From assembly GCF_002113885.1 (NCBI RefSeq), contig NW_018408896.1, positions 124,001 to 188,000 on the forward strand: 64,000 nt of DNA. Reading direction: 5' to 3'. Positions 1 through 50,337 of this stretch are shown piece by piece. A program made the position numbers and the translations under genes. This DNA is from Mizuhopecten yessoensis (Eukaryota). The number at the start of each line of letters is the position of its first letter. Position 1 is the first letter of the stretch. Under the pieces are notes generated by a model, which was given only the letters and a program-made list of their open reading frames with translations, searched no databases and was not told the DNA's origin.

Positions 1-2321
1 CTTTTCAGCAATAAGGTGTTTGTTTGTGTGTTTTGGTATTTCTCATTGTAATGAAGCATGGATTAGTGGAACCCCCCATGCCTACTCTGTCTCTTCTGAA
101 TAATAATTCTTGTTTATTGTTTTGAAGGCTGTTTGTTTGAACTACAAATGCTAAAAACTGATAGCTTGATACTGCACAGATGCTATCGATACTGTACCTG
201 GCAAGTTTCTCGAAGGGTCGTTTACTTAAAACTATAGATACAATGCAGGTTGAAAATTCCCTTTTGACGTAAACTTTTTATCGGAGGAATTGTAAGCGTT
301 ATTGATTAACACAGTAGGACATGAAGATAACATACCCGACAGTATTATAGCATTCGTGAGTCCAACGAAATGGATATAGTGTGCGAAAACCGCAAACATT
401 TTGTTACAACAAATGCACAGCTGGACTGAGAAAATGTATTTTATGGACATTTTAAAGTTGCATGGCACCCATAGTCTTCCATACATAAGTACTGATACGT
501 CAAACGAACACCGACCTCGTCAGTGAGTGTAGATGTAAACTCTTCCACCAACCAACCATACTTGCTGAGGACGACGCCATACCACACTAATCATCATGGC
601 AGCTATACCGGAACAGACGTTACTCAGTGGGTACCAGGTACCTTGTGTTGGTCTTGGTACCTGGAAGGTAGGATGTTGGTGAAATGGAGTATTAGTGATT
701 TTTGGTATTAACAGTTCATTTAACAGACATGGGTATGTCCATCATATATCTATATAGTCCTATTTTCACTCCTTTCAACATGACTAACTATATATATGCA
801 CGTATGTTTTACGTATGTTTTTTATTCGTTGATTTAACTAACAAATGTAACAGATATAGGTCATGTGTTACGCTTTGACGCATCATAATAAATATTGCTG
901 GTAAACGATAACGACCTCTGCCGATACATCCCGACCACGCTGTCAGAGACCTAGTGTAACTTAACCTCGTAGCTAGATTGTCTTATGTTAAATGGGTAAA
1001 ATTGGAGGTTCGCCATTGGGGTTATATTTTATGTGGAAAAACATTGCTTTTCAGCAATAAGGTGTTTGTTTGTGTGTTTTGGTATTTCTCATTGTAATGA
1101 AGCATGGATTAGTGGAACCCCCCATGCCTACTCTGTCTCTTCTGAATAATAATTCTTGTTTATTGTTTTGAAGGCTGTTTGTTTGAACTACAAATGCTAA
1201 AAACTGATAGCTTGATACTGCACAGATGCTATCGATACTGTACCTGGCAAGTTTCTCGAAGGGTCGTTTACTTAAAACTATAGATACAATGCAGGTTGAA
1301 AATTCCCTTTTGACGTAAACTTTTTATCGGAGGAATTGTAAGCGTTATTGATTAACACAGTAGGACATGAAGATAACATACCCGACAGTATTATAGCATT
1401 CGTGAGTCCAACGAAATGGATATAGTGTGCGAAAACCGCAAACATTTTGTTACAACAAATGCACAGCTGGACTGAGAAAATGTATTTTATGGACATTTTA
1501 AAGTTGCATGGCACCCATAGTCTTCCATACATAAGTACTGATACGTCAAACGAACACCGACCTCGTCAGTGAGTGTAGATGTAAACTCTTCCACCAACCA
1601 ACCATACTTGCTGAGGACGACGCCATACCACACTAATCATCATGGCAGCTATACCGGAACAGACGTTACTCAGTGGGTACCAGGTACCTTGTGTTGGTCT
1701 TGGTACCTGGAAGGTAGGATGTTGGTGAAATGGAGTATTAGTGATTTTTGGTATTAACAGTTCATTTAACAGACATGGGTATGTCCATCATATATCTATA
1801 TAGTCCTATTTTCACTCCTTTCAACATGACTAACTATATATATGCACGTATGTTTTACGTATGTTTTTTATTCGTTGATTTAACTAACAAATGTAACAGA
1901 TATAGGTCATGTGTTACGCTTTGACGCATCATAATAAATATTGCTGGTAAACGATAACGACCTCTGCCGATACATCCCGACCACGCTGTCAGAGACCTAG
2001 TGTAACTTAACCTCGTAGCTAGATTGTCTTATGTTAAATGGGTAAAATTGGAGGTTCGCCATTGGGGTTATATTTTATGTGGAAAAACATTGCTTTTCAG
2101 CAATAAGGTGTTTGTTTGTGTGTTTTGCTATTTCTCATTGTAATGAAGCATGGAGTAGTGGAACCCCCCATGCCTACTCTGTCTCTTCTGAATAATAATT
2201 CTTGTTTATTGTTTTGAAGGCTGTTTGTTTGAACTACAAATGCTAAAAACTGATAGCTTGATACTGCACAGATGCTACCGATGCTGTACCTGGCAAGACT
2301 CGAAGGGTCGTTTACTTAAAA
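1..2321. repeat. 1046-bp tandem duplication (>=2.2 units, open at the window's left edge); each full unit contains the AKR gene 1 upstream region, exon 1 and the start of intron 1
   Basis: 1-1046 and 1047-2092 look identical (ORFs 232/1278 and 523/1569 repeat at +1046). A third partial copy at 2093-~2321 has a few SNPs/indels and ends at TTTACTTAAAA. Confidence 0.95.
596..667 (+). CDS. Extra copy of AKR gene 1 coding exon 1 ([24 protein letters not shown])
   Basis: ATG at 596, 72 nt, AAG|GTAGGA donor; identical to 1642-1713. Confidence 0.8.
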
Positions 2322-17034: not shown

Positions 17035-20000
17035 ATGGCAGTAATTCCGGAACAAACGTTACTCAGTGGATACAAGATACCATGCGTTGGTCTCGGAACT
17101 TGGGAGGTAGGACCTTGCTGAAAGGAATATAAATGCACACTTCATTTAACTGACCTGGATTTATCTGTGTATTGTATTTGCTTACCTCTGATAAATTGTA
17201 CTTTGTACCGACTTGTGTTCGGGTCTCAACAAGAGTTAAACCCGTTAAATCATTGTATTGATAATGACCGAACTTTTTCAGTTTAACTGTGTACACTCAT
17301 GTTTTTATACATTTCGTTCAATTATCATATTCAGGTATCTAAATACCTATTGTACTGATATGACGCATAGAGAATAAACAGTAGGTATATTGTACGTTAG
17401 AGATAACGTTAAGCCACTTCCTACCCGACTGTAGTGACACGATCGTGCAATAGAAAAGTATGGTGCGCCAGCTGGACATTGGTATGTTTATTATTTTTAA
17501 TGATAAGATAGAAACAGGCAGATTTACAATTTCCAGGATTTATTTACAAGATATTGGCTGCCTATTTCCTCCTTGGATTGGGATAAGTGAAACAACTAAT
17601 TTAAGTTTCTATAACATTTAAGGTACTCCGAAGACCCCTAAGTGTACTTATTTATTTCAGTCAAAACCTGGAGACTTTAGGGCGGCTGTGAAGACTGCGA
17701 TAGGGCTGGGATACCGGCATTTCGACTGTGCACTCGCCTATGGAAATGAAAAGGAGATCGGAGAGGCATTTAAGGAAATAACTGATGAAGGAACAGTCAA
17801 ACGTGAGGAATTGTTCATCACAACAAAGGTACAATTAGCCTCTCTTATATCGTCAATATCGTTTAAATATCATGTACAATATGTAACAGAGATTCAAAGC
17901 CTGACGTCACATTTTATCATAACCTTCATTTTATTATATTTTATTGTGTATAAATATAATCATGATATATTTGGTTTAATTTCCTAACAGCTTAGGTTAT
18001 TTAAGGACTTTCCTCCATGTGGGTACTATGTGCGTGCTTGTGTACATGTGTGCTGGAGCCGGTTTGTGCAATGTGCTTGGCTCCTTTTAATAGTGCGGAT
18101 CTGATGCCGACCTTATTGTGCAACCTCACTTAAATATCGTGTGACAAACACACAGCCTAGTATTCTACCGGTAACATTATACAACGTTACAACCTGTGAA
18201 TGATATAGGACACCTATTTCACGATATTTAGATATGTTTCATGAGCGAAAAATATGAAAACATTTCAACACATGACTTTGCTCTTTTTCATACTAAACCC
18301 TGCTGTCTGATAAGTCGCCTTAGTGTGAAATTGTGAAACTAAGGTTTCAGATGTAGGTCAAGAAATTTATCACTGAAAATTATAAAAATGCATAATTTTC
18401 AGCTTTGGAACACCTACCACAGTAAGGCCCGAGTACTGGAGGGGTGTAAGGAGTCACTGACAAACTTCGGTCTGGACTACATTGATCTGTACATCATTCA
18501 CTGGCCTTTTGCTACGAGGGTAAGACGTCAGGTGTCCCAGTGAAGTAATATATTGGTTTCACAATAACGTATCACGTGATCAATATATAGAATGTATCGA
18601 GTTCATTCAGGTCCATTTAAACCATTGATACATATATCATACAGCTCATTTGTCTAAAGTTAATTGGTGTTTTTTTTGTAAACAGCAGAAACGGGTATAT
18701 TTCTGTATCGGTTTGCGAATGTAAAATGCTGTTTCGCAATTGTGTGATAGATGAATAAGTTTGTTAATCAAGGAACGCTCACATTGTTAAACGAAAGCGT
18801 AGCTGTTAAGATGAATACAAAACATCATAAACATATATTTGTTACCTTGATACTACAACATGAATAGCCTTTGTCGTCCCTATATTCCACTTCAATTGTT
18901 ATATTTGATCATCTCATTCACGTTCGTATTTGATTGGAGTGGTTACGTAGGAAGTTGATACTATTTTTGTATACTCTTATAGCCGGCGATTACTTGATAC
19001 CTTTGGCTTTTTTGTGATTATATCATTTGATGAAATGGTCAAATGCATGCACTCTTTTGCGATATCGCACTCTTATCACGCCCTTGGCTGTCAGTTTCAT
19101 TCACATTATAATTCAAACTAATCTTAGAGTTATGATTATCGATTTACAAAGTAAGTTAACGCTAATTTACATCTCTACTATATTGTTTGAACTTTTTCTA
19201 GAATTTTGATTAACGATATTGTTAGAACTCGCTGTTAACACTATTAGAAGTCGTTTTCAGCTATAAATTATAATTAAGTTCATTCCCGGATTTCACTATG
19301 ATAATCAATGATTTTCAGGAAAATGATGGGTTGTACCCATTAACACCTGATGGCAAGACTGATGTTGTCGATATAGACTTCATAGAAACATGGACAGTAA
19401 GTACATCTAAATGTTATATATCCTATAAAAAACCTGATAAGGTATGACAAGTTTGTATTACTTACTCTGTTCCGCCATAACTAGTAAATAAGATAACTAT
19501 TTGGTGTAAATAGAATATTTTTTTCAATTTTACGGAAAACAGAATGTTTTATATTTGTCGTATCATTGTTTGCAGTTGTTAAACGTAAATTTACAATATT
19601 TTATAAGAAAGAAAAAAAAAGTCGAACATTGACTTGTGTTTCCAGCAGGATTGTGCCGTTACATAAACATTTGATCATTCATTGCGAAAGAGTTTTAGGA
19701 ATGTTATTAGTTACAAACTCGTAGTCGGCCTTTCAAAATCAGTTAACTTTGATGATAAATAATATAACACACTGTTAAAATGCACATTTATTTTCAATGC
19801 GTTTATTGACTAAACATTTATTTTGAATGCCTTTTCTTTTTTTTTTATAAAATACATTATCAGTAAAAAAAACACCAATATATATATAGTTCCGGTATAT
19901 GACCTGATTATAGTTGTGTATCGTTGATACATGTGCGCTATCTTGGTTTGGTTTTACCGGGTTTAAAGTTCTTTTAGAATCCAAGGTCGTACAATAAAAC

Positions 20001-23000
20001 ATTGTGTTAATTATTTTCACCTAGACGATCAAATTAATATACCACGAATTTATTTGTCCTTTTCGAGCAAATCGACATCCTCACCATTTACATTTGTAAA
20101 AGGTCTGACTGACGTTGTTATGGTAGATTGTATCTTGTCTATTCTTTTCTCGTTTACTATACAATTTCTTGTATATTCGCGTTAGGACTAAATGCATCAA
20201 TGCAGCAGTTGTTCCGCAGTTTGGAATAGTATCCTTTATGTGAAGAAATAATTTTTGATAAATCATTATGAGCTGCAAAATTTCACTATTATGAAATTAC
20301 CTTACTCAAATTATTTGTTGCATTACATTACTGCTCTCTATCGAACAGGCCATGCAGGATTTGGTAGACGAGGGTATGTGTAGATCCATAGGTGTGTCTA
20401 ACTTCAATTCTAAACAGATTCAGAGGATTTTAGATCTTGGTTTGAAACATCCATTGTCATGTAACCAGGTACGTACAAAATAGTTTGTTCCAGGAAAGAT
20501 TTTGAATTTTTGTTCGGCTTTGCAAACAGTGGTTATAAATGCATCAAATATAAAAATGTATTAGTCTGCTTGACAAATATTGCTTTATAATGACACGGTG
20601 ACTATTATTACTTCAATTCCAGATCGAAATATCTCCCTATAATTCCAATGGAAACTTGCTACAGTTCTGTCAATCCAAAGGCATTGTCGTAGTGGCGTAT
20701 TGCCCTCTGGGTTCTGCTGAGCGACCATGGTAAGCTTGAAGAGTGGCAATTCATTTGTAACATGTACAATATAACGTTATTTTTGAGACCAATTATAGGT
20801 CATAATTATTTTAAATCTGTATGACATATTCTTTATGAAAAATCATCGTATTGCTAAATCAATGATAAGTTGAATCGTACTTGTAAAGCTGAATTCTCGA
20901 AATGTTATTGGTCTAAATATATGAACATATGTTACATTCTAGCATTGTTCCAATTTGACACTGATATACTTTTTGTTTGACATTTAGGGCGAAACCTGAC
21001 GACCCTAAATTACTAGAAGAACCGGAGATAGCAAAAATAGCAACTCGATACAGCAAGTCACCTGGCCAGGTCTGTATGATGTGATGACTTTACATATACA
21101 TGTACTTAGACGGTAACGAATTTCGTCTAACGGACTAAAATGTGTACTCTTAACAGTAAGCTGTTTTTAAAAGGGACACGAACGGGTAGAATAGTAGTAC
21201 TTTGGTAATGTCTGTGTTTTAGAAATTAAATAACGGTAAAATAATAAAATAAAGATGCGATTACATGTTTGTGAGTTACATTCCTATTTCTAAGAATATT
21301 GATGGGACATAGAGATGCCCTTGATATATCGTCAATGTGTGTACGGAAACTCATTTTCTTTTGTTTATTTATTTGTACAGAATTAGAGGCCAATGTTTAG
21401 GAACAGCTATACAAATATTATGTGAAGGAGAATTTCTAGAGGTAAAATTAACAGTGAAACATATTCATTTTATTTTATGTCGACTTCTTTTTTTTTAATT
21501 ATAACGTTAAAGTAATCAAGTTTTGCCTGATGTTAAGGTTGTACTTCGATGGGGTGTACAAAGAGGATATATCGTCATACCGAAAAGCGTGTCTGCAGCA
21601 AGAATGACACAAAACATTGAAGTAGGTATACATTGTATTGTCGGGTGTCATGCAATTTTTATACTAAACGACAAAAATTGCAAGCCCTTAAATATACTAA
21701 ATCCGTGTTTTACTGAAGGTTTTGTAAACATACTGTAATCAAATTAAAGATTTGAGATTTTAAAAGACGTGTAACAATTTCAAGTTGTAAATTAAATATG
21801 GACATAATTAAATTAATGAAGCTTAACATATTAAAGATACATTAATGAACATAGATTAATTAACATTTTAAGTGAAAATGATAAATCAACCCCACTCCTA
21901 AATGTATTCTGTAAAAAAAATCTGAACTGTTTTGATTACCGAAATATATTATACATAAACACATATTGCAGATTCAACGTTTATTATGAGTTCAGATAAT
22001 AATTTATCGGCAATCATGAATTTAATATTTTATTAATTTATTCAGGAGGTTTTTCAGATGTTAGCGTTAAACTCTGATCGAAGGTGATAATGCTGTATAC
22101 AACTTCAAATAACTTCAGATAAGGCTTACAAATTTGTAATGGCTTTGTTTTCTTCACATAAAGGATTATATTCCAAACTGCGGAACAACTGCTGCATTGA
22201 TGCATTTAGCCCTAACGCGAATATACAAGAAAGTGTATAGTAAACGAGAAAAGAATAGACGAGATACAATCTACCATAACAATGTCAGTTAGACCTCTTT
22301 TATTCAGCTCGGTATGTAACTAGAACAAATGTTAATGGTGAGGCTGTCGATTTGCTCGAAAAGGACAAATAAATTCGTGGTGTATTAATTTGATCGTCTA
22401 GGGTGAAAATAACTAACATAATGTTTTATTGTGCGCCCTTCGATTTTAAAAGAACTTTAAACCCGGTAAAACCAAACCAAGATAGCACACATGTAGCAAC
22501 GATACACAACTATAACACATACACTACTGAGTCGGTGCTTGCTTAGACTACCCCCTTCAGTGATTTCCTTTCACCTGAGTGATGATGAAACGGAGTCTCA
22601 TGATAGAAATAAAAAAATAAAAACTCTTTACCATGAAACATTGTAAGCTATACTTATAGATTTGATGTCAATATTTAATTACAGCTTTTTGACTTTGAAC
22701 TGAACGATGATGAAATGAAATTCATACACGGGATGAATAGGAACGCTCGATGCTGTCTCTGGGCAGAGTACGACCCTTTTTGTAAACTTAAATCACTTTG
22801 CAACAATTAATATTCACATCATAAAATATCTAACATAAAAAGGACTGAATCAGTTAGTTTTTTGTGTTCCTTGAAGCATTTATTTCCATTTCTCGTGGTT
22901 TTTAATTCAAATTTCTGTACCATGATGTGTATATGCTATTTTTTTAGTTCTTTTTACTACCAAGTTCTTTAAAGTATCTTGAATATTTCAATCTTATATA

Positions 23001-23271
23001 TATAATTTGACCCTCATCTCATTTTGTATATTTCAAAAATAGAATGGTGAAACATTGTCGGAATGTAAAAATAAGTCAGGTTACCGATATTTGTATTTAT
23101 ATATGTATATATATACATAATTGTATTCACAGCAATGGTGATTTCCAAAGGGAATCTACCCTACTATATTTTATATGCTTCACGCTTTACTTACTTAAAT
23201 ATAAACTATACTATCTATTGTTTTTCAGTGCCTCACACAGTCCCTACTATCCTTTCAAAGAGGAGGTTTAG
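17035..23271 (+). CDS. AKR1B1-like: Aldo-keto reductase family 1 (aldose reductase-like), gene 2, 10 exons, 317 aa
   Basis: Exons 17035-17106, 17661-17828, 18403-18519, 19319-19396, 20349-20468, 20623-20729, 20988-21069, 21538-21621, 22685-22767, 23229-23271. All GT-AG, 954 nt in frame. Catalytic D/Y/K/H intact; ends YPFKEEV*. Confidence 0.93.
17970..18200 (-). mobile_element. SINE-like repeat copy in gene 2 intron 2 (also present in gene 4 intron 2 at ~36215-36460)
   Basis: Similar to 16245-16500 (AAGGAC.T.CCTCC, GCGGATCTGATGCCGAC). Confidence 0.55.
19908..20248 (-). repeat. Inverted copy (left arm) of a gene 2 intron 8 segment, located in intron 4
   Basis: Reverse complement of 22149-22515 at roughly 90% identity, with one ~30-bp gap. 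Confidence 0.9.
22149..22515 (+). repeat. Right arm of the gene 2 intronic inverted repeat (ancestral intron 8 sequence)
   Basis: Complementary to 19908-20248. Diverged homologues lie in intron 8 of genes 3 (~29880-30360) and 4 (~42690-43060). Confidence 0.9.
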
Positions 23272-28600: not shown

Positions 28601-31600
28601 AAAGGTTGCTACAGTTCTGTAAATCCAAAGGAATTGTTGTGGTCGCGTATTCTCCACTTGGGTCTGGTGATCGACCATTGTAAGTTTAATGATTGACAAT
28701 ATATTTCTTAACAATACTTGTTTCATAGGTACATAACGTCTTCAATATGACTCTTTTACAGTATCTGATCATAATAGTTTTTGTACTATCATATATGAAG
28801 TATTCCTTTTCATATTCATGGTATTGATAAATCAATAAAACGTTCCGAAGTCATTCGTACTTTCAAAATAAAGTTCTCGAAACGTTATTTGTATGAAGAA
28901 ATTTAAATCTCTAACTTTGGTGCATTGCTCCTCTTTAACACTGATATGCATGCCTTTTTGATTGACTGGTAGCGTAAAACCCGAAGATCCAGTATTACTT
29001 GAAGAACCAGAGATAGTAAAGATAGCAGCTCAATACAACAAGTCACCTGCCCAGGTATGTATAAATTGATGGCTTTACATGTATTTAGACAGTAACGAAT
29101 TATGTCTAACGGACTAAAATATGTACACTTAACATTAAGCTGTTTAAAGTAAAGTATATTGAGTAAAAAAGTCTAAAAAAATGACGCATTGTATTTCGAC
29201 ACGGTTTTGCATTTGCATTTGCTTTTTTAAAATCATTAAGTTAAATTACTTATGGTTGTCCTATGTTTAGATTTTACTTCGATGGGGTGTACAAAGAGGA
29301 TTTACCGTCATACCAAAGAGTGTGTCAGCAGCAAGAATGAATCAGAACTTTCAAGTAGGTATAAATTGTATTTTAACGTCGGGTATAATGCAAAATTTGT
29401 ATTAAATGACAACATGGCAATTCCTTAATAAACATTGGTTAATGAACGTCGTAAATAAAAATAATACTTCCACCTCACTCAAGACAGTTTTCAGTCAAAC
29501 GCTATTCTTAATGTTTTTTATCAATGAAAACATTGTATTGAAGGTTAAATGTTGTTACATTTATTCATAAACGAATCTATAGGTAATCATATTATATTAT
29601 TTCGTTCACTCATACATGATGTGAATTCGGACGTTAACGCAAAACTCAGACCGAAAGTGTTGAAAATAAATCTGTAAACATCTATTTTGCGAAAGAATTA
29701 TTTTAATCGGATTGGTAAATGTTCACAATTTTTGCCTAGAATTCAAAATATGAAGTCAAACTTTAAGTCTATGCACTGCCAATATTATTCTGAACTAAGG
29801 TTTCTATGAAAATGAATTATGATTGCCTTCCGCAGGGAAGTAACTCAAAGGCTTAACAATTTCTTTAAGTGGCTTTACCTTCTTTCCATAACGGATAATA
29901 TTCCCAAGTCAACAAAACAGCTATGAAGAGTGGATTTTTCTTCGTGGTAAAACTGTATAAGTTTATATACGCGAATATACAAGAAATTAAATATTAAATA
30001 AGAACATAAAAAAGCAACGAAGTGTTAAATCTACAATAACAATGTCAATTATGCTGATTATATTCCATTCGGTCTAGATCACGTATTTACAATTTGGGAT
30101 TATAATAATATTTTAACTCCACTATGGCTAAAGGTTATAATTATATAATTAGCAAAACATTGAGTATTGATGTAATCTAGGTTATGTAAGTTAATTTGAG
30201 ATCAATTCATGTAATTTATGCAATAATTTGTCATTAAATGTCACCTTCGGTGGCCATTTTCAACTTCAATTTGCTGTTGTGTTATCTTTGAGTTGAAGTA
30301 GCATAAAAGGACTTTAACCCTAGTAAAACCAAATCAAACTATCGCACACGTATCGTCGTACTGACGACAGAGAAAACAAACATAAACTGTTGGGTCGATG
30401 TTTGCTAATACTACCGTTGCCAGTGATTCCGTTTCACCTTGAGTGATGATGAAGTATCATAAATTTAGTCCAACGATAGAAATAAACTTATCGGTGTATT
30501 TAACGAAACAGAGTAAGCTTTACTAATTGACATAATGTCAACTTTCAACTACAGCTTTTTGACTTTGAACTGAACGATGATGAAATGAAAGTCATACACG
30601 GGATGAATCGGAATGCTCGATGTCGCACCTGGACCAACCAGAGGTACGATCCCTTTTTTAGTAAACTTTAATCATTCGGTAACAATTAATATTCGCATCC
30701 TAATACAGTACGCGTGTGTTGTGTAATAAACACCTACATCCTAATACAGCACGGGTTTGTTATGTAATTAACATCTACTTACTACAGTACGGGTGTGTTG
30801 TGTAATAAACACCTACATCCTAATACAGCACGGGCTTGTTGTGTAATTAACATCTACATACTAATACAGTACGGGTGTGTTGTGTAATAAACACCTACAT
30901 CCTAATACAGCACGGGTTTGTTGTGTAATAAACACTTACATTCAAATACAGCACGGGTTTGTTGTGTAATTAACATCTACATCCTAATACAGTACGGGTT
31001 AGTTGTGTAATTAACATCTACACACTAATACAGTAAGGGTGTGTTGTGTAATAAACACCTACATCCTAATACAGCACGGGTTTGTTATGTAATAAACACC
31101 TACATCCTAATACAGCATGGGTTTGTTATGTAATTAACACCTATATCCTAAAACAGCATGGGTTTGTTGTGTAATTAACATCTACATCCTAATATAGCAC
31201 GGGTATGTTGTGTAAAAAACACCTACATCCTAATACAGCACGGGTTTGTTATGTAATAAACACCTACAACCAAATACAGCACGGGTGTGTTGTGTAATTA
31301 ACATCTACATCCTAATCTAGCACGGGTTTGTTGTGTAATAAACACCTACATCCTAATACAGAACGGGTTTGTTGTGTAATAAACATCTACATCCTAATAC
31401 AGGACGGGTTTGTTGTGTAATAAACACCAACATCCTAATACAGCACGGGTTTGTTGTGTAATAAACATCTACATCCTAATATCACACGGGTGTGTTGTGT
31501 AATAAACACCTACATACTAATACAGAACGGGTTTATTGTGTAATTAACATCTACATCCTAATATCACACGGGTTTGTAGTGTAATAAACACCTACATCAT

Positions 31601-38200: not shown

Positions 38201-41200
38201 AACCTTGCATCGCTCTCAGTCCAACAGAAGCTCATTTTAGAATTTCACTATATTATTCAATTATTTTCAGGATATTGATGGATTATACCCAAAAACACCT
38301 GATGGCAAGATTGATGTTGTCGATATAGACTTCATAGAAACGTGGACAGTAAGAACATCTAAATGTTATATGTCATATATACAAACTTACACGATACGAC
38401 AAGTTCGTGCCATTTGCATTGACATTACTTGGCAGCTTTTATGATTTAATTTTAATTGATCAAAATCCTTACTTAATGCTGAGATTTAATATTATTTTCA
38501 ATAAGCAAACTAAAAATTTGAAAAACTTTTAAATGTGAATCTGACATCATTTGGAAGAAATATGTAGCCTAAATCAAAATAGTGTTTGCTCTATATTGTC
38601 AATGCTCTCCTTTCGTAACAGGCCATGCAGACTTTGGTTGACCAGGGTATGTGTAGATCTATAGGTGTATCCAATTTCAATTCTAAGCAAATCCAGAGGA
38701 TTATAGATATTGGTTTTAAACATCCACTGACTTGTAACCAGGTATGTATGAAAACATGTTTATTGAAATAATAAATTTAAATAAGTTTTCTCCGGCTTTA
38801 TAAACAGTGGTTATAAATACGACAAATATACAATTGTATTAGCCTGCATGACTAATATTTCTATATAATGATTCAGCGACTATTACGACTTCAATTTCAG
38901 ATCGAAATATCTCCATATTATTCCAACGAAAGGTTGATACAGTTCTGTCAATCCAAAGGAATTGTCGTAGTGGCGTATTCTCCTTTGGGGTCTCCTCAGC
39001 GGCCATGGTAAGTTTCAAGGTTGGCAATTTATTTTTAAGCAATACGTAATTGATGTGTATATAACGTGTACAATATGCTTTTATAAAATCAGTAATAGCT
39101 CATAATTATTATATATGAAATACTTCTTGTCATAATCCTGGTATTGATATATAAATGATAAATTTATATTTCATTCGTACTTTCAGAATAAAGTTCACGA
39201 AACGTTATTTGTTTAAATATATGTATATCCGAGACATTGTTGTACTGTTCCTCTTAGACAATGATAAACATAGTTTCTTGTTTAACGATTAGGGCGAAAC
39301 CCGACGATCCTAAGTTACTAGAAGAACCAGAGATAGTAAAGACAGCAGCTCAATACAACAAGTCACCTGCTCAGGTATGTATAAGATGATGGCTTTACAT
39401 GTATTTAGACAGTAACGAATTTCCTCATACGGACTAAAATATGTACACTTTTTTTATATATATATATACATTTAATAACCCAGGCATGCATACATCATTC
39501 GTGGGTTGTCTGGGGATGGGCTGCCCCAGCTACAACCCACAATACATGAAACACTCTCTTTTTTCTTTCTTCACAAAACAACACTTGTTCATTTCTTTCG
39601 CTTTCACTTTTTCACACTCTCATACTGTAATTTCTTCTTTTTTATCTCACCTTGTTACACTCTCGTACAAACCGTCCTCACACGGAGGTAACAAAAAACA
39701 ATTAACACGGAAAAATATGTACACTTAACATTAAGCTGTTTTTAAGAAGAGACATAAACGGGTAGAAAATTGTTTTGGTATTGACTCTTTATTGTTGTGC
39801 TGTATATCGCTGTTATAGGTCAATGGTTGAAGTTTCAAACAGTGGCAAATGTTCAGTACTCTCAAATGAAGTTTTATGCGACATTGACCGCCACTGTTAT
39901 CTCTTTTGAACAGTGGCATGGTTCATAATATAGACTTTACAGATAATTTCATTTGAAAATACCAGTCCTTCTCTAAACATGTTAATTGATAATTAAAGGG
40001 TTTCACGCACCTGCCCCTCTACTTCTCCAACCTTTTGGCCCCTACATATACCATACGAAACAGCTGTATGATGCAGTAGCATTTTATTTATTTTTTGCAT
40101 ACTGTATCTTGTACAAAAAATGTAAGGTGCAATCACTTAAAATAATGTATAAAGGAGGTAAAATTAACTGTGAAACATAACATTTCGACATAGTTTTTCA
40201 TTTCATGTCGACTTCCTTTTGAATCTTTATTTTAAAGTTAACAAGTTTTTCTGATGTTAAGGTTGTACTTCGATGGGGTGTTCAAAGAGGATATATGGTC
40301 ATACCGAAGAGCGTGTCTGCAGCAAGAATGACACAAAACATTGAAGTAGGTATACATGTATTTCAATATCGGGTATAATGTAAATTTTACATTAATCGAC
40401 AAAATATAAGCTTCGTATATAAACAATATCTTCATAAACATTGATCATACATCTTACTTATAAATGTTTTCAGTAGCATTATCTTATTAACTTTTAGTAT
40501 TATCGAAAGTACTATATATTACGTACATGTTATACATGTAGGTTCAATATTTCGTTATTTATTCAGACACGAATCTAGAGGCAATAGTATATTTAATATT
40601 TCATTAACTCATTCATTTAATCGAATTTTAGCACAAAACTCAGACCGAAAATGTAAATAACAAGAATTGATTAAGATCAAAACACGGGATTTCCAACAGG
40701 AAAATGATCAAAGATATGTTCTCGGACTGACGATCGCTTCCCTTCGCTTCCCTTCTTTGACAAAACTTACCATAGGGTCAAGTTATTTCTGAACAGTCAG
40801 CATTGATAGAAAGCTGTTTAGTGTTTCTTTCGTCCGTCCCCCTTACCTTTGTGGGAACCTTATTACCTTTGTGGGGAAGTTATTTACTTGAGGTAGCTGT
40901 GAATGACAGCTCTGTTATTTGGACCCAGCGACACCAAATCCCAGTACACACAGTGATAGTCCTGGGGCAATGGTGAATGACAGCTCTGTTATTTGGACAC
41001 CAAACAACAGTAGGTATGATGATAGGTACACAGACAATGGTGATTGACAGCTCTGTTAATTGGACCGAGCAACACCTAAGTCCAGGACGGACAATGTCTC
41101 ATAATATTGTAGACAATTTGGTAAAAGAGGTTGAGTTATTTCCCTTTGTACAGTTTGACGAAAGTATTTCGACCATTCTTTAAGAAATAATCTGTCCTTT

Positions 41201-43797
41201 TATCTATTTATGTGCACTATGATGCTTTGACATTGAAACTTTAAAAATATCCTCATAAGAATGCACTCTTAAAAATATGGTGTAAAAAAAAAATGAAAAA
41301 ATTTGAAAATTTAAGTTTTTGATAATTTGACCCCTGTGACCTTGAATGATGGTCAAGGTCAACGATATCCGAAAAATATTGTAGTCAATGATACATGCTA
41401 TGTATGTGCCAAATATCAACTCTCTAGGCCTTAAGAATACGGAGAAGAGATTTAAGTGGGGTTTTTTTTAATATGAATTTTGGCGGGAAAATGAACATTT
41501 TTCAAAGTCGCATATCTTCGTTATTTTTTATGCTATGACTTTGAAACGTTCAACATACCATCCTTAGATCGTACTCTTTTAGTTATGAAAAAAAATACTA
41601 TTTTTGAGATTTTCATTTTTGACCTATATATGACCCCATATCGAGGCCTTGAACTTGACATATTCTCTGATAACATGTCACGGTAAAAAGTTAGCCCCGA
41701 CCAAGCATAATTTAATAGATTTTTTTCTAACTAAAAGGTGCGCGAAAAAAAGATACCTGTAACTGAGCAAGATAGGGTTATCGCAGTCCCAGGCTAAGAA
41801 TATGTAACATTCCAACCTCGGCTTGCGTCTCGGTTGGGATTATGTTACAGAGTCTTAGCCCTCGACTGCGACAACCCGATTTCGCTCAGTTACAAGTAAA
41901 ATATTTTATTAATCTCTTTTCAGATATAATTGTAACAAGAGAGGGCTAAGGTGTAAGAGGTAGCCGCGCTTCTTAGTTTGATAGGATGTCAGGGGTTATA
42001 GCGACTGATGATAGGAAGTAGTTCAGGGGTCATAGTGACTGGTGCTTAGAGGCCAGCGGTTATAGCGACTGAAGATAGGGAGTAGTTCAGGGGACATAGT
42101 GACTGGTGCTTGGAGGTCAGCGGGATTTGAATTTGACATATTCTCGGATAACATGTCATGGAAAAAAGTAAGCCCCGACCAAGATCTACCAGAAGTATGA
42201 AGCGGTCAAGCAGTACACCGAAAGCTTTCGAAGTTATGGTCGTTCAAAAAACGTTTTAAAAAACTCTATTTATAGACCTGTGACCTTGACCTTTGACATT
42301 ATGATCATGAATTTGTTCGCATATCATGTGTTCGTTGTTCTCTAATACATACTGCAATATGAACCTTATATCTTTATTCGTTCATGAGATAGAGTGTCCA
42401 CAAGATATCTGGAAATAAGAATAAGAAACTTAAAGAAACAGAACAATATCAAAAGGTTTTTCCATCCGAAATGGAAATCCCTAATTATGTGTTTACTATT
42501 TTGTTTTTGCGGATGAGTTAATAATAATTCACCATTTCATGAGGTTGCTACACACACAGAAACAGCATTATCAAACTCTGAACCAATACACGTCTAATCT
42601 TACTCTTAACCAGTGCTGCTATCAAAGTTAATTATGACTGCCTTGCAAAGGGTAGTAACTCTAGAACGAAACATTTCTTTAATGGCTTTATCTTCTGTAC
42701 ATAAGTGATTATACTCCCAGCTGTGAAGTGGTAATATTATATGCGGAAACATCTGCATTGTTACCCGAGCCCTAACGCCAATTAGAAGAAATTATACATG
42801 AAAATAACCAAACAATATCCAAGAGATCCAATCTTCAATAGCAATGCCAGTTAGGCTGCATATTTCAGGTAAATGTAAAAGGTACATATTGAGGCTGTCG
42901 AATTTGCTCCAAATCACGGACTTACAAATTCGCGCTATAATGATCCTTGAGTTTAAAGTGTGTAGTTAAGTCACATAATGTTTTACGGTAAGACCTGATA
43001 TTTTAAAAGACTTTAAAGCTTGTAAAATTAAACTAAACTGTCGCACCTGTATCGTCATACTGACAACAACGACAATATCTATAATACTGAAACCAATTTA
43101 GTCTTCTCAACGAAGGAGAGTACGCTTTACTTATTGACATTATGCCAATTTTTAATTACAGCTTTTTGACTTTGAACTGACGGATGATGAAATGAAAGCC
43201 ATACACGGGATGAATCGGGATGTCCGATGTTGTACGAACTCTGAGTATGACCCTTTTTTTAAACTTAAATCATTTGGTAACAGTTAATATTCACATCCTA
43301 GTATAGCATAGAATTATTCACTGATAATACTGTCTTTATGTATAAATCAGTTCTTTTCGATTAATGTCCTATTCTATTTCTGGAGGTTGGTGACTCGCAT
43401 TTCTTTACCGTGATATTTGCAATATGTCACGGTTTTAGTACTGGATAGCACTTTCACGTTCTTACCGATTGCTTTAATTTTCACGTTAGACTTCATCTGA
43501 CCATTATCTCATGTTGTCCATGTCTTGTTGATTTCTGTTTCAAGCCTTGATTTAACAAACTATCCATTTGTATTGTTAAGTAATACAAAGTTGGTGTGTT
43601 GTCGGAATGTTAATATTAGTCAGGTTTCTGATTTTTCAAATATAAATATAATTTTATTTACAACAATGGTGAATTCCAAAGGGTAGTTCTGCTACTATGT
43701 TTTATATATTTTATACTTTTCACGAACTGTACTTTACTTTTGGTTTATTTTCAGTGCCACACATAGTCCTTACTATCCTTTCCATGAGGAGTTTTAA
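35264..43797 (+). CDS. AKR1B1-like: Aldo-keto reductase family 1 (aldose reductase-like), gene 4, 10 exons, 317 aa
   Basis: Exons 35264-35335, 35893-36060, 37315-37431, 38271-38348, 38622-38741, 38901-39007, 39293-39374, 40262-40345, 43162-43244, 43755-43797. All GT-AG, 954 nt in frame. Tetrad intact. Confidence 0.93.
37533..37613. repeat. 27-bp tandem repeat x3
   Basis: CCATTCATGCATGTCTAATATAGCTAA at 37533, 37560 and 37587. Confidence 0.9.
39451..39711 (-). mobile_element. 261-bp retroposed insertion with a 15-bp TSD in gene 4 intron 7
   Basis: AAAATATGTACACTT at 39436-39450 and 39712-39726. Minus-strand ATTAAA, (TA)n and oligo-A tail. Empty site in gene 3 intron 7 (~29116). Confidence 0.8.
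40659..42485 (+). mobile_element. Non-autonomous Helentron-like (HINE/DINE-type) composite insertion in gene 4 intron 8
   Basis: Starts AACAAGA; contains TGACCTTGACCTTTGAC motifs and internal tandem repeats; AAGAAT-rich tract, then a 3' hairpin GGTTTTTCCAT-CCGAA-ATGGAAATCC (42455-42480). Absent from the paralogous intron of gene 3. Confidence 0.6.
41754..41898. repeat. 145-bp imperfect palindrome inside the Helentron-like insertion
   Basis: TACCTGTAACTGAGC..TCGCAGTC..GGCTAAGA..TGTAACA..CCAACC pairs with GGTTGG..TGTTACA..TCTTAGCC..GACTGCGA..GCTCAGTTACAAGTA. Confidence 0.85.
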
Positions 43798-45314: not shown

Positions 45315-48077
45315 ATGGCTGCTATACCGGAACAGACGTTACTCAGTGGGTATAAGGTACATGTACCATGCGTTGGTCTGGGCACTTGGAATGTAGGTTG
45401 TCTACGGAAGGAATTTAAATGCACTTTCTTTGGATTGACAGTGTATCTTATAGAGTTAGATTTATCTATTATGTCTGTTTACATCTGATCGAATGGACTA
45501 TGCACTGGCTTGACTTCGGGTCTGAACAGGGTTAGTTCATGGAAATAATCAGCCAAAAGTTGTTATTACATCAGGTTAATCTAAGCCCTCTGATTTAAAC
45601 TTTATATATATTCATTATATGTCCACACATGTTTCTGTCTAAATTGTTTAAGTAATTGGTATGGGGTTTTTTTTCGCTGATATGATGCATATAGGAACAA
45701 AATTATATAAAGATATCCGCTAGATATTACGTGAAAATACTACATACCCGACAACACTGATACAAGTGTGTAATATGAAGGCTAGGAGCGTAAGATTTGC
45801 ACTGTCATTATTATTCAATTCCAACGTCGTAATCTGGTTGTGTTGTATGATTCAGCTTAAATAATATCGACTTTCCTCTATGGTTTTTTTTTAATACATA
45901 TGTAATTCTATATATATATGATCGTAAGGAAAGGTACATGTAGATAAAAGCGGTTTTGCTTGAATAATAAATCATCCAAAATTTAAATCACACAAATTTC
46001 TTCCTGGAACAAATCTTGTGAAATGACCCCGATCAACTTCAGGCGATATCCAATATCATACTTGACTTTCCTCTTCTTTATTATCCTTCATGATTAAACA
46101 TTTTTTTTACTGAGAAAGAATAGACATTCTATAGGCAAAGAATAGGCAATTTAAGGTAATAGGATGGTGTCAGCATTTCTCAGTAGAATTTCTTTAAATT
46201 TTGTAGTTATATTGCTTTGAAGCAAAGACAATTTTCTGCCACAAAAACATATAGGTTGTCAGAATTTTAAGAATTTTAAATAGAAATTTATGTAAAAAGG
46301 AGTGAATTTTGAAGAAAAAAATGAAAGACACAATTTTTTGCAAAATAATGTCAATAAAAATGATACTGACATAGATTAGTATTGCATTAATGTATATCAA
46401 TTTAATAAATGATGAAAATGTGTAAAATTAATTATCCAAACGATTAAAAATTGACATTTTTTGATAAAACCATATACATATAGTAACTGCATGTAAGAGT
46501 TATCTTTCTTGAAAAAACTTCACAGTAGTGAAATAGGTAGCCGGTTTCCTGAAGTATAGAAAAATGGACACATGTGACTCAATGATAAAAACAACTGAAT
46601 TAATACCTGGATTGCTTTGAAATACTTTAATATTAAACATTAGAATATGCGTAAATTGTGATACTGTCTCCCTACATTGGATTTTCAACTAGGGATGTAC
46701 TTCCTATATCCGTTTATCAATACATTCCTATGACCTTAACTAAAACGATTGTTTAATATATATGCTAACTGTAACTTTCAGATTATGTTTTATATTTCAA
46801 TAGACATTGTGCTACATAATCTTGATCATTTTATGTATACTTATTATGCTCTCCAACTTTAAGTCAAAGCCTGGAGAAGTAGGGGCAGCTGTGAGGACCG
46901 CGATAGGTCTGGGATACCGGCATTTTGATTGTGCGCTAGCATATGAAAATGAAAAGGAGATAGGGCAGGCAATTAAAGAAGTTATTGGTAACGAAACAGT
47001 CAAACGTAAGGATTTGTTTATCACTACAAAGGTATGTTTATCCTCTCTAGAACCGCTCGGTAATCTTTTGTTGATGATATAATTTATCAATATCATAATA
47101 TGTCAACTTCACTACAATTCCATGTTACAAAAACCTAGCCTTAAGTCAGATTGCATCACTTTCGTTATAATTTTTTCGAGGTTATGTAAATATATAATTT
47201 CTGACTTGTATTTCGGGAAATATTTATTTTGTTTTTGTACTTATTTCATTTCAATCATTATATTTGATCAACCCATCACAATCGCCTCTGACTTCGGGGA
47301 TCTGGATAAAATGTTGACATTACTTCTCTATTAACTTTCAAACAGCGATTACTTAATGCATTTGGGTTTCCTAAATCGTTTAATCACTTGAAATATTGAG
47401 TTATCACCTTATATTAAGACGGTCATTTTCATTCACATTAAAATTCAAACTATATGAAATGCTGATCAAGATAATGAAGAATTTTCTCTTTCTTTATTTC
47501 AAGTAAAATATGTTAACAATGATAATAGTATGTTAAATAAAGGGTGTCCCTCCCCCACATGTTCCAACATAATTCACATTAAAAAATGGCCCGAGTACTG
47601 GAGGGGTGTAAGGAGTCCCTGACTACGTAGACCTTAACCTAATACACTGGCCTATTGCTTTGAAGTTAAGATTTCATGGAACGATACATTGGTTGTAGGA
47701 TATTCTATCTTTGTATAGGACTATGCGTATGTTCATCGATTTAGTCATTAAAGTTGCATGTAAAATACAGCTATGTGTAACATTTGATATACTATTTCGA
47801 TTGAACACATAGTTAAACATAAGCTCATGGAACGTTTGTGTAGTATAAAACTGCACAATAAATAAACAAGCAGAAAACTCATTGTCAAAAATTGAAATGT
47901 CGGTTCACTGGTTAAAAGTCGAAAGAACAGAAGTGCATCTCATCTCAGTCCAAAAGAGGTACATTCCATAATTTCACCATAATATTCAATAACTTTCAGG
48001 GAAATGTTGCATTGTTTCCTACACATCGTGATGGCAAGGCTAATGTTGTCGATATAGACTTCATTGAAACATGGACA
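45315..48077 (+). pseudogene. Truncated AKR1 paralogue (gene 5): exons 1, 2 and 4 open, exon 3 destroyed, exons 5-10 absent
   Basis: Exon 1 45315-45392 (+6 nt) and exon 2 46864-47031. Exon 3 remnant ~47588-47665 lacks its acceptor and 5' end, has a 16-bp deletion, and its donor is GT->TT. Exon 4 48000-48077. The upstream block of gene 6 begins at ~49544. Confidence 0.88.
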
Positions 48078-50337
48078 GTTAGTATATCCCCTTGTTTTAT
48101 ACCTTTATACAAACAAACTTGGTATGTAAAGCCATACCTCATGAGGATTGATAGATAGATATTTTATTGGAAATCTATTTTCTCATTAATGGAAAACAAC
48201 ATGTACATATATCATACTGTGAAATTTTCTAAAAGGTTTTTATTAAAAAGGTACACACTTTTTAATAGCACAGTTATGTTAATGAGATATGTAACAAGAA
48301 AATGCAGAAAAGCTGCTGGACACCAAACCATTTTATGAAAATGACCTCCTGATAGTCCATCAACCACGTGGGAACGGATCCTGCATGCTTGAATCTGTTT
48401 CATTTATACAGTTTGTCAAAATTGCAGCGATTTTTGCAAATATTTCTTCTGTCAATATACCTTTTTGACTTTTTTGGATAAATATCAATCATCTTCTAGG
48501 TTAAAACGTTAATCGTAGCCCCGCCACTTTGAATAATAGTTATTGCTTCTCTAGACTACTGCAAAGACACGTTTTGCCACAACGCTGGATTTTTTGGTTG
48601 TTATCACATATTCGTTTTATACAAGTGAAATAAATATATCGAATTGAACGGGAAAACCATGACATTTTCTATTTCTTACTTTTTTTTTCATTTCACGCTG
48701 CGCAAATATTGCTTCACCAGAAAAGCGCGCGAATGTATAACGTAGTTTTTGACGCCAAGTTGTAATGACGTCACGCTTGACAACAGTTCAGGGCACCATT
48801 TTGAATGGGTTTTCACTGCAAATTTGCCGTTCGCTCATATTATTTGGTAATATTTCCGGATAGAATGATATTAATTGTGTTGTTATGTAAAAACAATTAT
48901 GTATGCTGCAAAGGTAGAAAACACAACCACTTATTCTGCCGTCACTTTATCTAAACTTGAAACTGGAAATCTACGCAGAGAATATAATGTACCGTTCAGT
49001 TTGGACAATACTAAAAGAGAAGTTTTTACTTTTGAAGATATAATATTTCGTTTATCTTCACTGCATTAAATATATGTTTATTATCAAATGGAAAATTCAA
49101 GATATTTGACTACTAAACTGTAATAAATACCGACACCGTGGGATTGATCATCATGTTTTTTGTAGACGGTATGCGGCCTCAATTTCCCAGAAGGCTTTCA
49201 CGCATTGGGAAGCAATGTACAGAGAGTGTTTTAACATTCATTGTAGAAACACATTGTTCATTAATATGTGTATAATCTTTGAATTTTATATAAATAACCA
49301 TAACATAAATAAGTGTCATGTAGTGATATTATTAATAAATTGTGCAATAATTAATCTAATCTTACATGTGACATTACAGTGTATTTCTTCTGTAAATTTA
49401 AAAATTGTCTGTTATAATATTTACTACTATTACAGTATGTTATTGTTATTTTATATACTTGTGTTTGTCGCAATAATAGCTCTCAGGAGCTAATGTTCCA
49501 TGTTGATATGTATGCGACTATAAATAAAGCTTCTTGTATCTCGAGTACCAAATCAATTATATCATCTTGACTCTATGATCTGTGAAGACTTAATATGGTG
49601 ATAATGATTTAAGAATAGCAAGCAGTCAACAATGTCTTTATCATCAAATAATTGATGTAAGCCTTTATCTCCTTGTATAAATACTTAATCGGATCGAGTA
49701 GACATGGGGTACAGTACCAGTACCCTGACTAATAAACTATTTACGATAAAGTCACCTGCCGACATATCCTAAACTAAATATAAACGTAAAGAATAGTTTT
49801 GCAAAAGGTTTATTTTCACGATATATAATACAAATAAATAAAAAAAACTACTATGCTATCTGTTGTTGTCAAAAGCTGCAAACTTTTAACATGATAAATA
49901 AAGGACATGCATGATTCATACAAAACGCTCCTCACTCATATATGAATTACATTTAGTAAATATTGTGATATAATTGTATATACATTTATCTTCACAAGGA
50001 AACAATATTAACTGCAATTTAACTATACTATAACTATATCTTGAAAGTATTACACTTAAAAGCAGAAATACTTTACCCGAATATCACCAACGATGACATT
50101 GCAAAGCTTGCGCACCTTACTTACACATTACACACCGGTATCCACGTCATATCTGGCGTACATATTGACATAATATTGTTCATATATACATCATATCAGC
50201 GAAAATTAAAACGTACCAAATGCTTAAGGGAAGTCTAAATTTGGTATGACACTCGTTATCATTCGTACCGAAGGTCAAGTCAGATCACATATTAGAGGGA
50301 GCGAGATCTTGTGAAATATTCTACCACAACCATCGTC

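What the first reader, a model, noticed from the sequence alone, without database searches (positions are those of the whole stretch)
19908..22515. Gene-2-specific inverted intronic duplication brackets exons 5-8: circRNA/exon-skipping geometry with a stop-free 393-nt circle
Seen: ~340 bp of intron 8 (22149-22515) is copied in reverse orientation into intron 4 (19908-20248), ending ~100 nt before the exon 5 acceptor. It is host intron sequence, not an obvious transposon, because homologues sit in intron 8 of genes 3 and 4, and I see the inverted copy only in gene 2. Exons 5-8 total 120+107+82+84 = 393 nt, phase 0 at both ends, with GCCATG at the start of exon 5. Established: complementary flanking intron sequences promote back-splicing and are ADAR/Dicer substrates. 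Inference: the pre-mRNA can fold a long stem giving (a) a circle with an endless 131-codon frame, (b) an in-frame exon 4->9 skipped mRNA, or (c) edited dsRNA/siRNA. Any of these could regulate this paralogue.
Basis: partly seen in the sequence, partly recalled or inferred. Interest (0 to 1): 0.7.

Follow-up and report, generated by a model that had tools for sequence, protein, structure and literature searches.

The report
Inverted intron copy flanking reductase exons
One gene in a scallop tandem array of aldo-keto reductase genes carries a genuine, single-copy 340-base inverted copy of its own intron 8 inside intron 4, the textbook layout for circular RNA or exon skipping, but no RNA data could be obtained, so any effect is untested.

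Summary
The left arm, 19908-20248 in intron 4, is the reverse complement of the right arm, 22149-22515 in intron 8. Identity is 322 of 341 aligned bases (94.4%), with a 25-nt and a 1-nt gap.

- **Source and copy:** the right arm is the source. It lies in intron sequence collinear with intron 8 of genes 3 and 4, and that homology runs past both arm ends.
- **Not a transposon:** both arms and the left flank are unique in the 988-Mb genome.
- **Specific to gene 2:** no other paralogue has comparable intron-4/intron-8 complementarity.
- **Predicted pairing:** folding the 3.3-kb pre-mRNA segment pairs 327 of 341 left-arm bases with the right arm.

The "special" circle features are not special. Exon sizes 120/107/82/84 (393 nt, phase 0) and GCCATG at the start of exon 5 occur in all five complete paralogues.

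Forward read-through splicing between tandem paralogues gives the identical 50-mer.

My reading is a young, probably neutral, templated inverted duplication. It likely yields edited intronic dsRNA and low-level by-product circles or skipped transcripts.

An earlier first-reader note (s1-570335) reports a similar inverted intron duplication elsewhere in this genome.

The parts
17035..23271 (+). Gene 2 of the tandem array: an intact 10-exon, 317-codon AKR1-type aldo-keto reductase CDS, ATG to stop
   Evidence: Exon-by-exon translation has no stops and the phases are consistent. The catalytic residues sit in HFDCA / AYGNE / ITTK / IIHWP. Pfam PF00248 hits on exons 2, 5 and 6. PDB aldose/aldehyde reductase matches.
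19319..19396 (+). Exon 4 (78 nt, ends in phase 0); donor for the hypothetical exon 4->9 skip
19908..20248 (+). Left arm: the derived, inverted copy of intron-8 sequence, inserted in intron 4 (19397-20348). It lies 511 nt after the exon 4 donor and 100 nt before the exon 5 acceptor.
   Evidence: Its flanks have no homology to the source flanks. The upstream flank 19440-19910 is unique in the genome.
20349..20468 (+). Exon 5 (120 nt, phase 0)
20623..20729 (+). Exon 6 (107 nt)
20988..21069 (+). Exon 7 (82 nt)
21538..21621 (+). Exon 8 (84 nt, ends in phase 0); donor for the hypothetical back-splice
22149..22515 (+). Right arm: the ancestral source segment in intron 8 (21622-22684). It lies 527 nt after the exon 8 donor and 169 nt before the exon 9 acceptor.
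   Evidence: Collinear homology with intron 8 of genes 3 and 4 extends beyond both arm ends.
22300..22324 (+). 25-nt stretch present in the right arm and partly in the gene 3/4 homologues, absent from the left arm. It would form a bulge in the duplex.
22685..22767 (+). Exon 9 (83 nt, starts in phase 0); acceptor for the hypothetical skip
42671..43090 (+). Homologue of the right arm and its flanks in intron 8 of gene 4 (about 65-68% identity); used as outgroup
29848..30554 (+). Patchy homologue of the right arm and its flanks in intron 8 of gene 3 (about 68-75% identity); used as outgroup

Best explanation
This is a real, evolutionarily young DNA rearrangement. About 340-367 bp of intron 8 of one AKR1-type reductase gene was copied in reverse orientation into intron 4 of the same gene, 1.9 kb upstream. 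The most likely cause is a replication or repair template switch (templated insertion), not transposition. Since then both copies have drifted neutrally.

In any pre-mRNA that still holds intron 4 when the right arm is transcribed, the arms should pair into a duplex of about 340 bp that loops out exons 5-8. I infer three consequences, in falling order of likelihood. (i) Promiscuous A-to-I editing of the intronic duplex. (ii) A low level of back-spliced exon 5-8 circles, together with in-frame exon 4->9 skipped mRNA. That mRNA would encode a 186-residue product lacking residues 146-276, the cofactor-binding half of the barrel, and so would presumably be inactive. (iii) Little or no siRNA.

These would be by-products that at most slightly lower the output of this paralogue. 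Nothing indicates a selected regulatory device. Shown: the DNA anatomy, the direction of copying, uniqueness in the genome, specificity to gene 2, the predicted pairing, and the intact host gene. Inferred: every RNA outcome.
For: - Arms are confirmed at 94.4% identity.
- The right arm lies in intron sequence collinear with intron 8 of genes 3 and 4. Homology continues past both arm ends, whereas the left-arm flanks are unrelated.
- Only the arm itself, its inverted copy and the gene-4 homologue are found in the 988-Mb genome, and the flanking intron-4 sequence is unique.
- Of the 19-20 differences between the arms, 6 are derived in the right arm, 6 in the left arm and 8 are ambiguous. That symmetry fits neutral drift.
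- Cofold of the two arms gives -532 kcal/mol. The minimum-energy fold of 19397-22684 pairs 327 of 341 left-arm nucleotides with the right arm.
- Paralogues 1, 3, 4 and 6 have no comparable intron-4/intron-8 complementarity; their best matches are 13-114 nt at 60-92% with E >= 0.003.
- Gene 2 is intact, with canonical splice sites and the catalytic D/Y/K/H context.
- ADAR-type deaminase domains are present in this genome.
- Inverted repeats of 30-40 nt suffice for back-splicing in human cells (PMC4201285).
- Across metazoans, including molluscs, editing concentrates on dsRNA formed by nearby inverted copies (PMC9989829; PMC5625713 and PMC6651903).
- A second, older local inverted duplication of intron sequence exists at gene 6 in the same array, so the mutational process recurs here.
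Against:
- No independent DNA confirmation of the assembly was possible.
- Liang and Wilusz stress that not all repeats support circularisation. They describe back-splicing as slow and as requiring flanking introns that splice more slowly than average. Gene 2's introns are short (154-1063 nt) with good splice sites, so intron 4 may be removed before the right arm is made.
- Whether scallop back-splicing depends on intron pairing is unknown. I found no scallop circRNA catalogue in the paper library.
- No microhomology or target-site duplication was seen at the junctions to pin down the mutational mechanism.
Confidence: 0.6

Rival explanations
1. The duplication is real but has no RNA effect. 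Intron 4 is spliced co-transcriptionally before the right arm, about 2 kb downstream, emerges. The duplex therefore rarely forms, and gene 2 behaves like its paralogues.
For: The introns are short with consensus splice sites. Back-splicing is slow and needs slowly spliced flanking introns, and many repeats do not support it (PMC4201285). The arms show symmetric neutral decay and a 25-nt bulge, with no sign of constraint.
Against: The predicted duplex is far longer and more stable than the 30-40 nt shown to suffice. No competing within-intron pairing is present. Pol II needs only a further 1.9 kb to produce the partner arm.
Confidence: 0.22
2. Assembly artefact. The left arm is not in the genome at this place. 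For example, a gap in intron 4 could have been filled with reads from the other haplotype of the right arm, brought in in the wrong orientation by a roughly 2-kb mate pair.
For: The assembly is a highly fragmented scaffold assembly (82,659 contigs) of a heterozygous bivalve. The distance between the arms (1.9-2.4 kb) is in the range of short mate-pair inserts. No independent data could be consulted.
Against: The arms differ at 5.6% of sites plus a 25-nt indel, which is high for two alleles. There are no Ns anywhere in the 64-kb window. Both junctions run into unique sequence. A second local inverted duplication in the same array is only 84% identical and so cannot be allelic. 200 kb of other sequence from this assembly shows no such pair, so it is not a frequent assembler product.
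Confidence: 0.1
3. A selected regulatory device. The inverted copy is maintained because the circle (possibly translated around its endless 131-codon frame), the skipped isoform or siRNAs regulate this paralogue.
For: The geometry is ideal and specific to gene 2. The circle frame is open with in-frame ATGs at codons 2, 10 and 126. The host gene is intact.
Against: The open frame, phase and ATG are inherited from the family-wide exon structure. The arms have decayed symmetrically, as neutral sequence does. The skipped product lacks half of the barrel. There is no RNA evidence. Circles born from young inverted repeats are generally regarded as splicing by-products; this last point is my own knowledge and was not checked here.
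Confidence: 0.05
4. The arms are two copies of a mobile element (MITE or SINE-like) that landed in opposite orientations.
For: Most intron pairs known to promote circular RNA are transposon-derived. An earlier first-reader note (s1-570335, not checked here) describes a MITE-bounded inverted duplication of intron DNA elsewhere in this genome.
Against: There are only three matches in 988 Mb, all in this array, though the tool warns that counts are lower bounds. Homology of the right arm to paralogous introns continues seamlessly beyond the arm ends. No terminal inverted repeats or target-site duplication were seen. Rfam finds nothing.
Confidence: 0.03

Closest known systems
Circular-RNA loci flanked by inverted intronic repeats (human ZKSCAN1, HIPK3, EPHB4 with inverted Alus; Liang & Wilusz 2014, PMC4201285)
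   Same: Reverse-complementary sequences sit in the two introns that flank a set of internal exons. They lie close to the back-splice acceptor (100 nt) and donor (527 nt), and the splice sites are canonical. Arm length (about 340 nt) is like an Alu, and the circle size (393 nt) is like EPHB4's 360 nt.
   Different: The arms are not transposons. They are a unique duplication of the gene's own intron. The organism is a bivalve, in which dependence of back-splicing on intron pairing has not been shown here. No back-splice product has been observed for this locus.
Mouse Sry circular RNA (inverted genomic duplications flanking the exon; described in PMC4201285)
   Same: Non-transposon inverted duplications of flanking sequence bracket the circularised exon or exons.
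   Different: The Sry repeats are longer than 15 kb and flank a single exon, and that circle is experimentally established. Here the arms are 0.34 kb, four exons lie between them, and nothing has been measured.
Drosophila laccase2 circular RNA (intronic repeats plus hnRNP/SR control; Kramer et al. 2015, PMC4617980, title and abstract only)
   Same: An invertebrate gene whose circularisation depends on complementary intronic repeats.
   Different: The laccase2 repeats are transposon-derived (my own knowledge), and its circle is abundant and verified.
ADAR hyper-editing of dsRNA formed by nearby inverted copies (PMC9989829, PMC5625713; mollusc ADARs in PMC6651903)
   Same: This is an inverted pair 341 nt long at 88-94% identity. 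That is well above the >=80% identity / >=50 nt reverse-complement criterion PMC9989829 uses for intramolecular dsRNA. ADAR-type domains are present in this genome.
   Different: Most edited pairs are young repeats. This is a unique intragenic duplication, and no editing has been observed. The arms are 1.9 kb apart, at the edge of the +/-2 kb window that study used.
Template-switch / fold-back inverted duplications arising in replication or break repair (my own knowledge, not checked in the library)
   Same: A local segment is copied in reverse orientation a short distance away on the same chromosome, without transposon hallmarks. A second case lies at gene 6 in the same array.
   Different: Typical template-switch events are tens of bases over tens to hundreds of bases. 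This one is 340 bp over 1.9 kb, and no junction microhomology was found.

Membership tests
Intron-pairing (inverted-repeat-flanked) circular-RNA locus | [quoted passage not shown] | tested here: met
   Arms are 19908-20248 (intron 4) and 22149-22515 (intron 8), 94.4% identical over 341 aligned nt.
Intron-pairing (inverted-repeat-flanked) circular-RNA locus | Canonical acceptor at the first circularised exon and canonical donor at the last | tested here: met
   Exon 5 has an AG acceptor and exon 8 a GT donor. All internal exons have AG/GT.
Intron-pairing (inverted-repeat-flanked) circular-RNA locus | Pairing across the exons outcompetes pairing within each flanking intron | tested here: met
   The minimum-energy fold of 19397-22684 pairs 327 of 341 left-arm nucleotides with the right arm. 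No other strong inverted pairs occur in either intron. This is a thermodynamic prediction only.
Intron-pairing (inverted-repeat-flanked) circular-RNA locus | An observed back-splice junction, RNase R-resistant and absent from DNA | not testable with these tools
No scallop circRNA catalogue was found in the paper library.
Transposon-derived inverted repeat pair (MITE/SINE) | Multiple dispersed copies in the genome | tested here: not met
   Only the arm itself, its inverted copy and the gene-4 intron-8 homologue were found in 988 Mb. The tool states that counts are lower bounds.
Transposon-derived inverted repeat pair (MITE/SINE) | Defined element termini (terminal repeats or target-site duplication), with homology stopping at those termini | tested here: not met
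   Homology of the right arm to intron 8 of genes 3 and 4 runs through both arm ends. No TIR or TSD is seen at the left-arm junctions.
Aldo-keto reductase superfamily, AKR1-like (host gene) | Match to the Aldo_ket_red profile above the curated cut-off | tested here: met
   PF00248: exon 2 scores 42.2 bits and exon 5 scores 30.2 bits against a cut-off of 24. Exon 6 scores 16.1 bits, below the cut-off on its own. The search was done exon by exon; the joined protein was not searched.
Aldo-keto reductase superfamily, AKR1-like (host gene) | Catalytic tetrad Asp-Tyr-Lys-His in conserved contexts | tested here: met
   HFDCA, AYGNE and ITTK in exon 2 and IIHWP in exon 3. Exon 2 aligns to residues 23-78 and exon 5 to residues 144-184 of human aldose reductase chains. 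Assigning the tetrad positions rests on my knowledge of AKR1B1.
ADAR substrate (long intramolecular dsRNA) | Reverse-complement partner of >=50 nt at >=80% identity within a few kb on the same transcript | tested here: met
   341 nt at 88% identity including gaps, 1.9 kb apart, in the same gene and on the same strand. The criterion is from PMC9989829.
ADAR substrate (long intramolecular dsRNA) | Clustered A-to-G mismatches between RNA and DNA | not testable with these tools
   No reads were available.

The most novel reading that the evidence does not exclude
The inverted copy has turned one member of a five-paralogue array into a lineage-specific circular-RNA producer born from a unique intragenic duplication rather than a transposon. 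The exon 5-8 circle, or the coupled exon 4->9 skip, would be abundant enough to tune the enzyme output of this paralogue. The circle might even be translated around its endless 131-codon frame. The array would then be a natural paralogue-controlled experiment on whether intron pairing is sufficient for back-splicing in a lophotrochozoan.
Probability: 0.06. Interest if true: 0.6.

Novelty: new member of a known kind. Interest (0 to 1): 0.27.

Why it matters
If RNA data showed a gene-2-specific circle or skip, this array would be a tidy natural experiment. Five paralogues share the same exon structure and splice sites, and only one has the intron pairing. That would show that a unique, non-transposon inverted duplication is enough to create a new circular RNA in a mollusc. 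As it stands, the locus is a well-documented structural variant with textbook geometry. It also carries a practical warning. In same-strand tandem arrays, 'back-splice' junctions can be mimicked by ordinary forward splicing of read-through transcripts between paralogues. The two independent local inverted duplications in one 64-kb array also hint at a recurrent template-switch process in this genome.

Tried and rejected
- **Word search:** The search for homologous proteins with the 81-codon ORF spanning the left junction found no candidate. Intronic ORFs are evidently not in that collection, so the blank says nothing.
- **Rfam:** a scan of 19300-22800 at E <= 1 found nothing. The arms are not a known structured RNA.
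- **Transposon reading:** rejected on copy number and on homology running through the arm ends.
- **Retro-copy from an edited RNA:** rejected, because the differences between the arms show no A-to-G bias (11 transitions and 8 transversions, in mixed directions).
- **Insertion site:** I looked for a clean empty site by aligning the intron-4 flanks with paralogous introns. The 3' side is alignable up to about the arm boundary, but the 5' side is too diverged and low in complexity to define the site or any deletion.
- **Literature:** searches for scallop circRNA catalogues or AKR-array papers gave nothing usable.
- Exons were searched one by one by reference. The check for annotated exon-skipped isoforms in protein databases was therefore left out.


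Full report
**Context.** The window lies in a 3.16-Mb scaffold of a 988-Mb, 82,659-contig assembly. Earlier notes of this scan call it the Yesso scallop. That agrees with my memory of that assembly's size, but I did not verify it. The window holds a same-strand tandem array of AKR1-type aldo-keto reductase genes.

- Genes 1, 2, 3, 4 and 6 are complete.
- Gene 5 (45315-48077) has only exons 1-4.
- A copy at 57830-59546 has lost several splice sites.

Gene 2 is intact, with ten coding exons over 17035-23271 and 317 codons. The Asp/Tyr/Lys/His contexts are preserved. Exons 2, 5 and 6 hit Pfam PF00248. Exons 2 and 5 align to residues 23-78 and 144-184 of human aldose reductase chains. From memory, the exon sizes (168, 117, 78, 120, 107, 82, 84, 83) are those of vertebrate AKR1B genes apart from one codon in exon 5.

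**The observation.** The inverted repeat is real and lies at the stated coordinates.

- Three collinear blocks score 93-96% complementarity.
- A global alignment of 19908-20248 against the reverse of 22149-22515 gives 322 matches and 19 mismatches (11 transitions, 8 transversions).
- There is a 25-nt gap (22300-22324, right arm only) and a 1-nt gap.
- The left arm sits in intron 4 (19397-20348), 511 nt after the exon 4 donor and 100 nt before the exon 5 acceptor.
- The right arm sits in intron 8 (21622-22684), 527 nt after the exon 8 donor and 169 nt before the exon 9 acceptor.
- Exons 5-8 total 393 nt with AG/GT at every boundary. Frame 0 of the circle has no stop, while frames 1 and 2 have many.

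**Which copy is the source, and is it a transposon?** Intron 8 of gene 2 is collinear in patches with intron 8 of gene 4, gene 3 and, near its 3' end, gene 6. The homology around the right arm continues past both arm boundaries: 22128-22530 against gene 4, and 22447-22684 against gene 3. The sequences flanking the left arm share nothing with the source flanks. The 25 nt missing from the left arm are partly present in the outgroups.

Whole-genome searches with the right arm, with the left arm plus flanks, and with the upstream part of intron 4 return only this locus and the gene-4 homologue. The tool warns that counts are lower bounds. I saw no terminal repeats or target-site duplication, and Rfam finds nothing. 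A high-copy transposon is effectively excluded.

**Age and selection.** Polarising the differences with the gene 3 and gene 4 outgroups gives 6 changes derived in the right arm, 6 in the left arm and 8 undecidable. This symmetric decay at about 5.6% total, against 30-40% divergence between paralogous introns, indicates a single event much younger than the gene duplications. It has been followed by neutral drift, and there is no sign that pairing is being preserved.

**Is it specific to gene 2 and unusual?** A window-wide scan finds no other inverted pair bracketing internal exons. Intron 4 against intron 8 comparisons in genes 1, 3, 4 and 6 give only chance-level matches. An arbitrary 200-kb sample of other DNA from this genome contains no inverted pair of >=100 nt and >=85% identity within 5 kb. 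The pair is therefore not part of a dense background of such repeats.

**Predicted RNA structure.** Cofolding the two arms gives about -532 kcal/mol with a near-continuous helix. The minimum-energy fold of the whole 3,288-nt segment from the intron 4 start to the intron 8 end pairs 327 of 341 left-arm nucleotides with the right arm. The stem would bring the exon 8 donor close to the exon 5 acceptor, which is the back-splice geometry. It would also bring the exon 4 donor close to the exon 9 acceptor, which is the skip geometry.

**What is not special.** Exon sizes 120/107/82/84 and GCCATG at the first bases of exon 5 are found in genes 1, 3, 4 and 6 as well. The endless 131-codon frame, phase 0 at both ends and the in-frame ATG are inherited features of the family's exon structure. 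They are not evidence of a designed translatable circle. Exons 5-8 encode residues 146-276. The in-frame skipped mRNA would therefore encode a 186-residue product lacking about half of the barrel, including the region that binds cofactor in AKR1B1 (that last point is my own knowledge). It would almost certainly be inactive.

**A flaw in the proposed test.** Over 25+25 nt, the gene 2 back-splice junction is identical to two other junctions. One is 'gene 4 exon 8 + gene 6 exon 5'. The other is 'gene 2 exon 8 + gene 6 exon 5'. It is also within 2-4 mismatches of other combinations. The skip junction differs from that of gene 3 at one position. Because the paralogues are tandem on one strand, forward splicing of read-through transcripts, or reverse-transcriptase template switching, can generate the same reads without any circle. 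Junction counting must reach gene-specific positions and should be combined with RNase R treatment.

**What could not be done.**

- A word search with a junction-spanning ORF found no candidates, which is uninformative.
- I therefore could not look for annotated skipped isoforms.
- The paper library holds no circRNA catalogue for this scallop.

As a result, expression of gene 2, back-splicing, skipping, editing and small RNAs are all untested. The assembly of the left arm also lacks independent confirmation.

**Mechanistic reading.** Established work shows three relevant things.

- Inverted repeats of 30-40 nt are sufficient for circularisation in human cells. Not all repeats work, however, and back-splicing is slow and favoured when flanking introns splice slowly (PMC4201285).
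- A-to-I editing across metazoans, including oyster, sea hare and octopus, concentrates on dsRNA made by nearby inverted copies (PMC9989829; PMC5625713).
- Molluscs have ADAR1 and ADAR2 homologues (PMC6651903), and this genome has several A_deamin loci.

I therefore expect the duplex to form in the fraction of transcripts that still hold intron 4 when the right arm is made. I expect it to be hyper-edited, and to give low levels of the exon 5-8 circle and of exon 4->9 skipped mRNA as by-products.

My estimates are as follows.

| Reading | Probability |
|---|---|
| Real duplication with these by-product effects | about 0.6 |
| Real but RNA-inert | about 0.22 |
| Assembly artefact | about 0.1 |
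| Selected regulatory device | about 0.05 |
| Transposon pair | about 0.03 |

**Origin.** There is no transposon signature, the source lies 1.9 kb away in the same gene, and the orientation is inverted. Together these point to a replication or repair template switch (templated insertion), although I found no junction microhomology to prove it. A second case in the same array supports a recurrent local process. The segment 50093-50227, about 110 nt upstream of the gene 6 ATG, is an 84%-identical inverted copy of intron-1 sequence 50640-50784. That source has homologues in intron 1 of genes 2, 3, 4 and 5, and the pair is again unique in the genome. An unverified first-reader note reports a further inverted intron duplication elsewhere in this genome (s1-570335).

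**Verdict.** I class this as a new member of a known kind: an intron-pairing geometry created by a unique intragenic inverted duplication. Interest is modest until RNA data exist.

Noticed in passing
window 50093-50227 and 50640-50784: A second paralogue-specific local inverted duplication. Intron-1 sequence of gene 6 is ancestral, with homologues in intron 1 of genes 2, 3, 4 and 5. It is copied in reverse (84% over 145 nt) to about 110 nt upstream of the gene 6 ATG, so the pair brackets exon 1 (50338-50409). It is unique in the genome. If the transcription start lies upstream of 50093, it could form a hairpin around the start codon and the first donor.
   Followed up: partly
window exons of genes 2, 3, 4 and 6 (e.g. 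20349-20468 vs 53482-53601; 21538-21621 vs 40262-40345; 22685-22767 vs 30555-30637): Gene 2 has a mosaic of exon identities to different paralogues: exon 5 is 98.3% identical to gene 6, exon 8 is 96.4% to gene 4, and exon 9 is 95.6% and exon 3 is 94% to gene 3. The adjoining introns are only 60-70% identical. This suggests short-tract gene conversion between array members, or strong exon constraint.
   Followed up: no
window 596-667 and 1642-1713: The first coding exon of gene 1 is present twice, about 1 kb apart, with identical hit statistics. This looks like a local tandem duplication of the 5' end of gene 1.
   Followed up: no
window 45315-48077 and 57830-59546: These are degenerate array members. 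Gene 5 has only exons 1-4, and its exon 3 is mostly lost. The copy at 57830-59546 lacks AG/GT at several exon boundaries. Both are probable pseudogenes.
   Followed up: no
window 63003-63227 onward: A further, more divergent AKR-like exon 2 (45% identical at protein level to gene 2) lies at the end of the window. Earlier notes of the scan (s1-517170, s1-568246) call this gene a possible catalytically dead AKR. I did not examine it.
   Followed up: no
window 21741-22005: A weak (58%) self-complementary stretch lies inside intron 8 of gene 2. It is probably an AT-rich low-complexity effect and is too weak to compete with the main stem.
   Followed up: no
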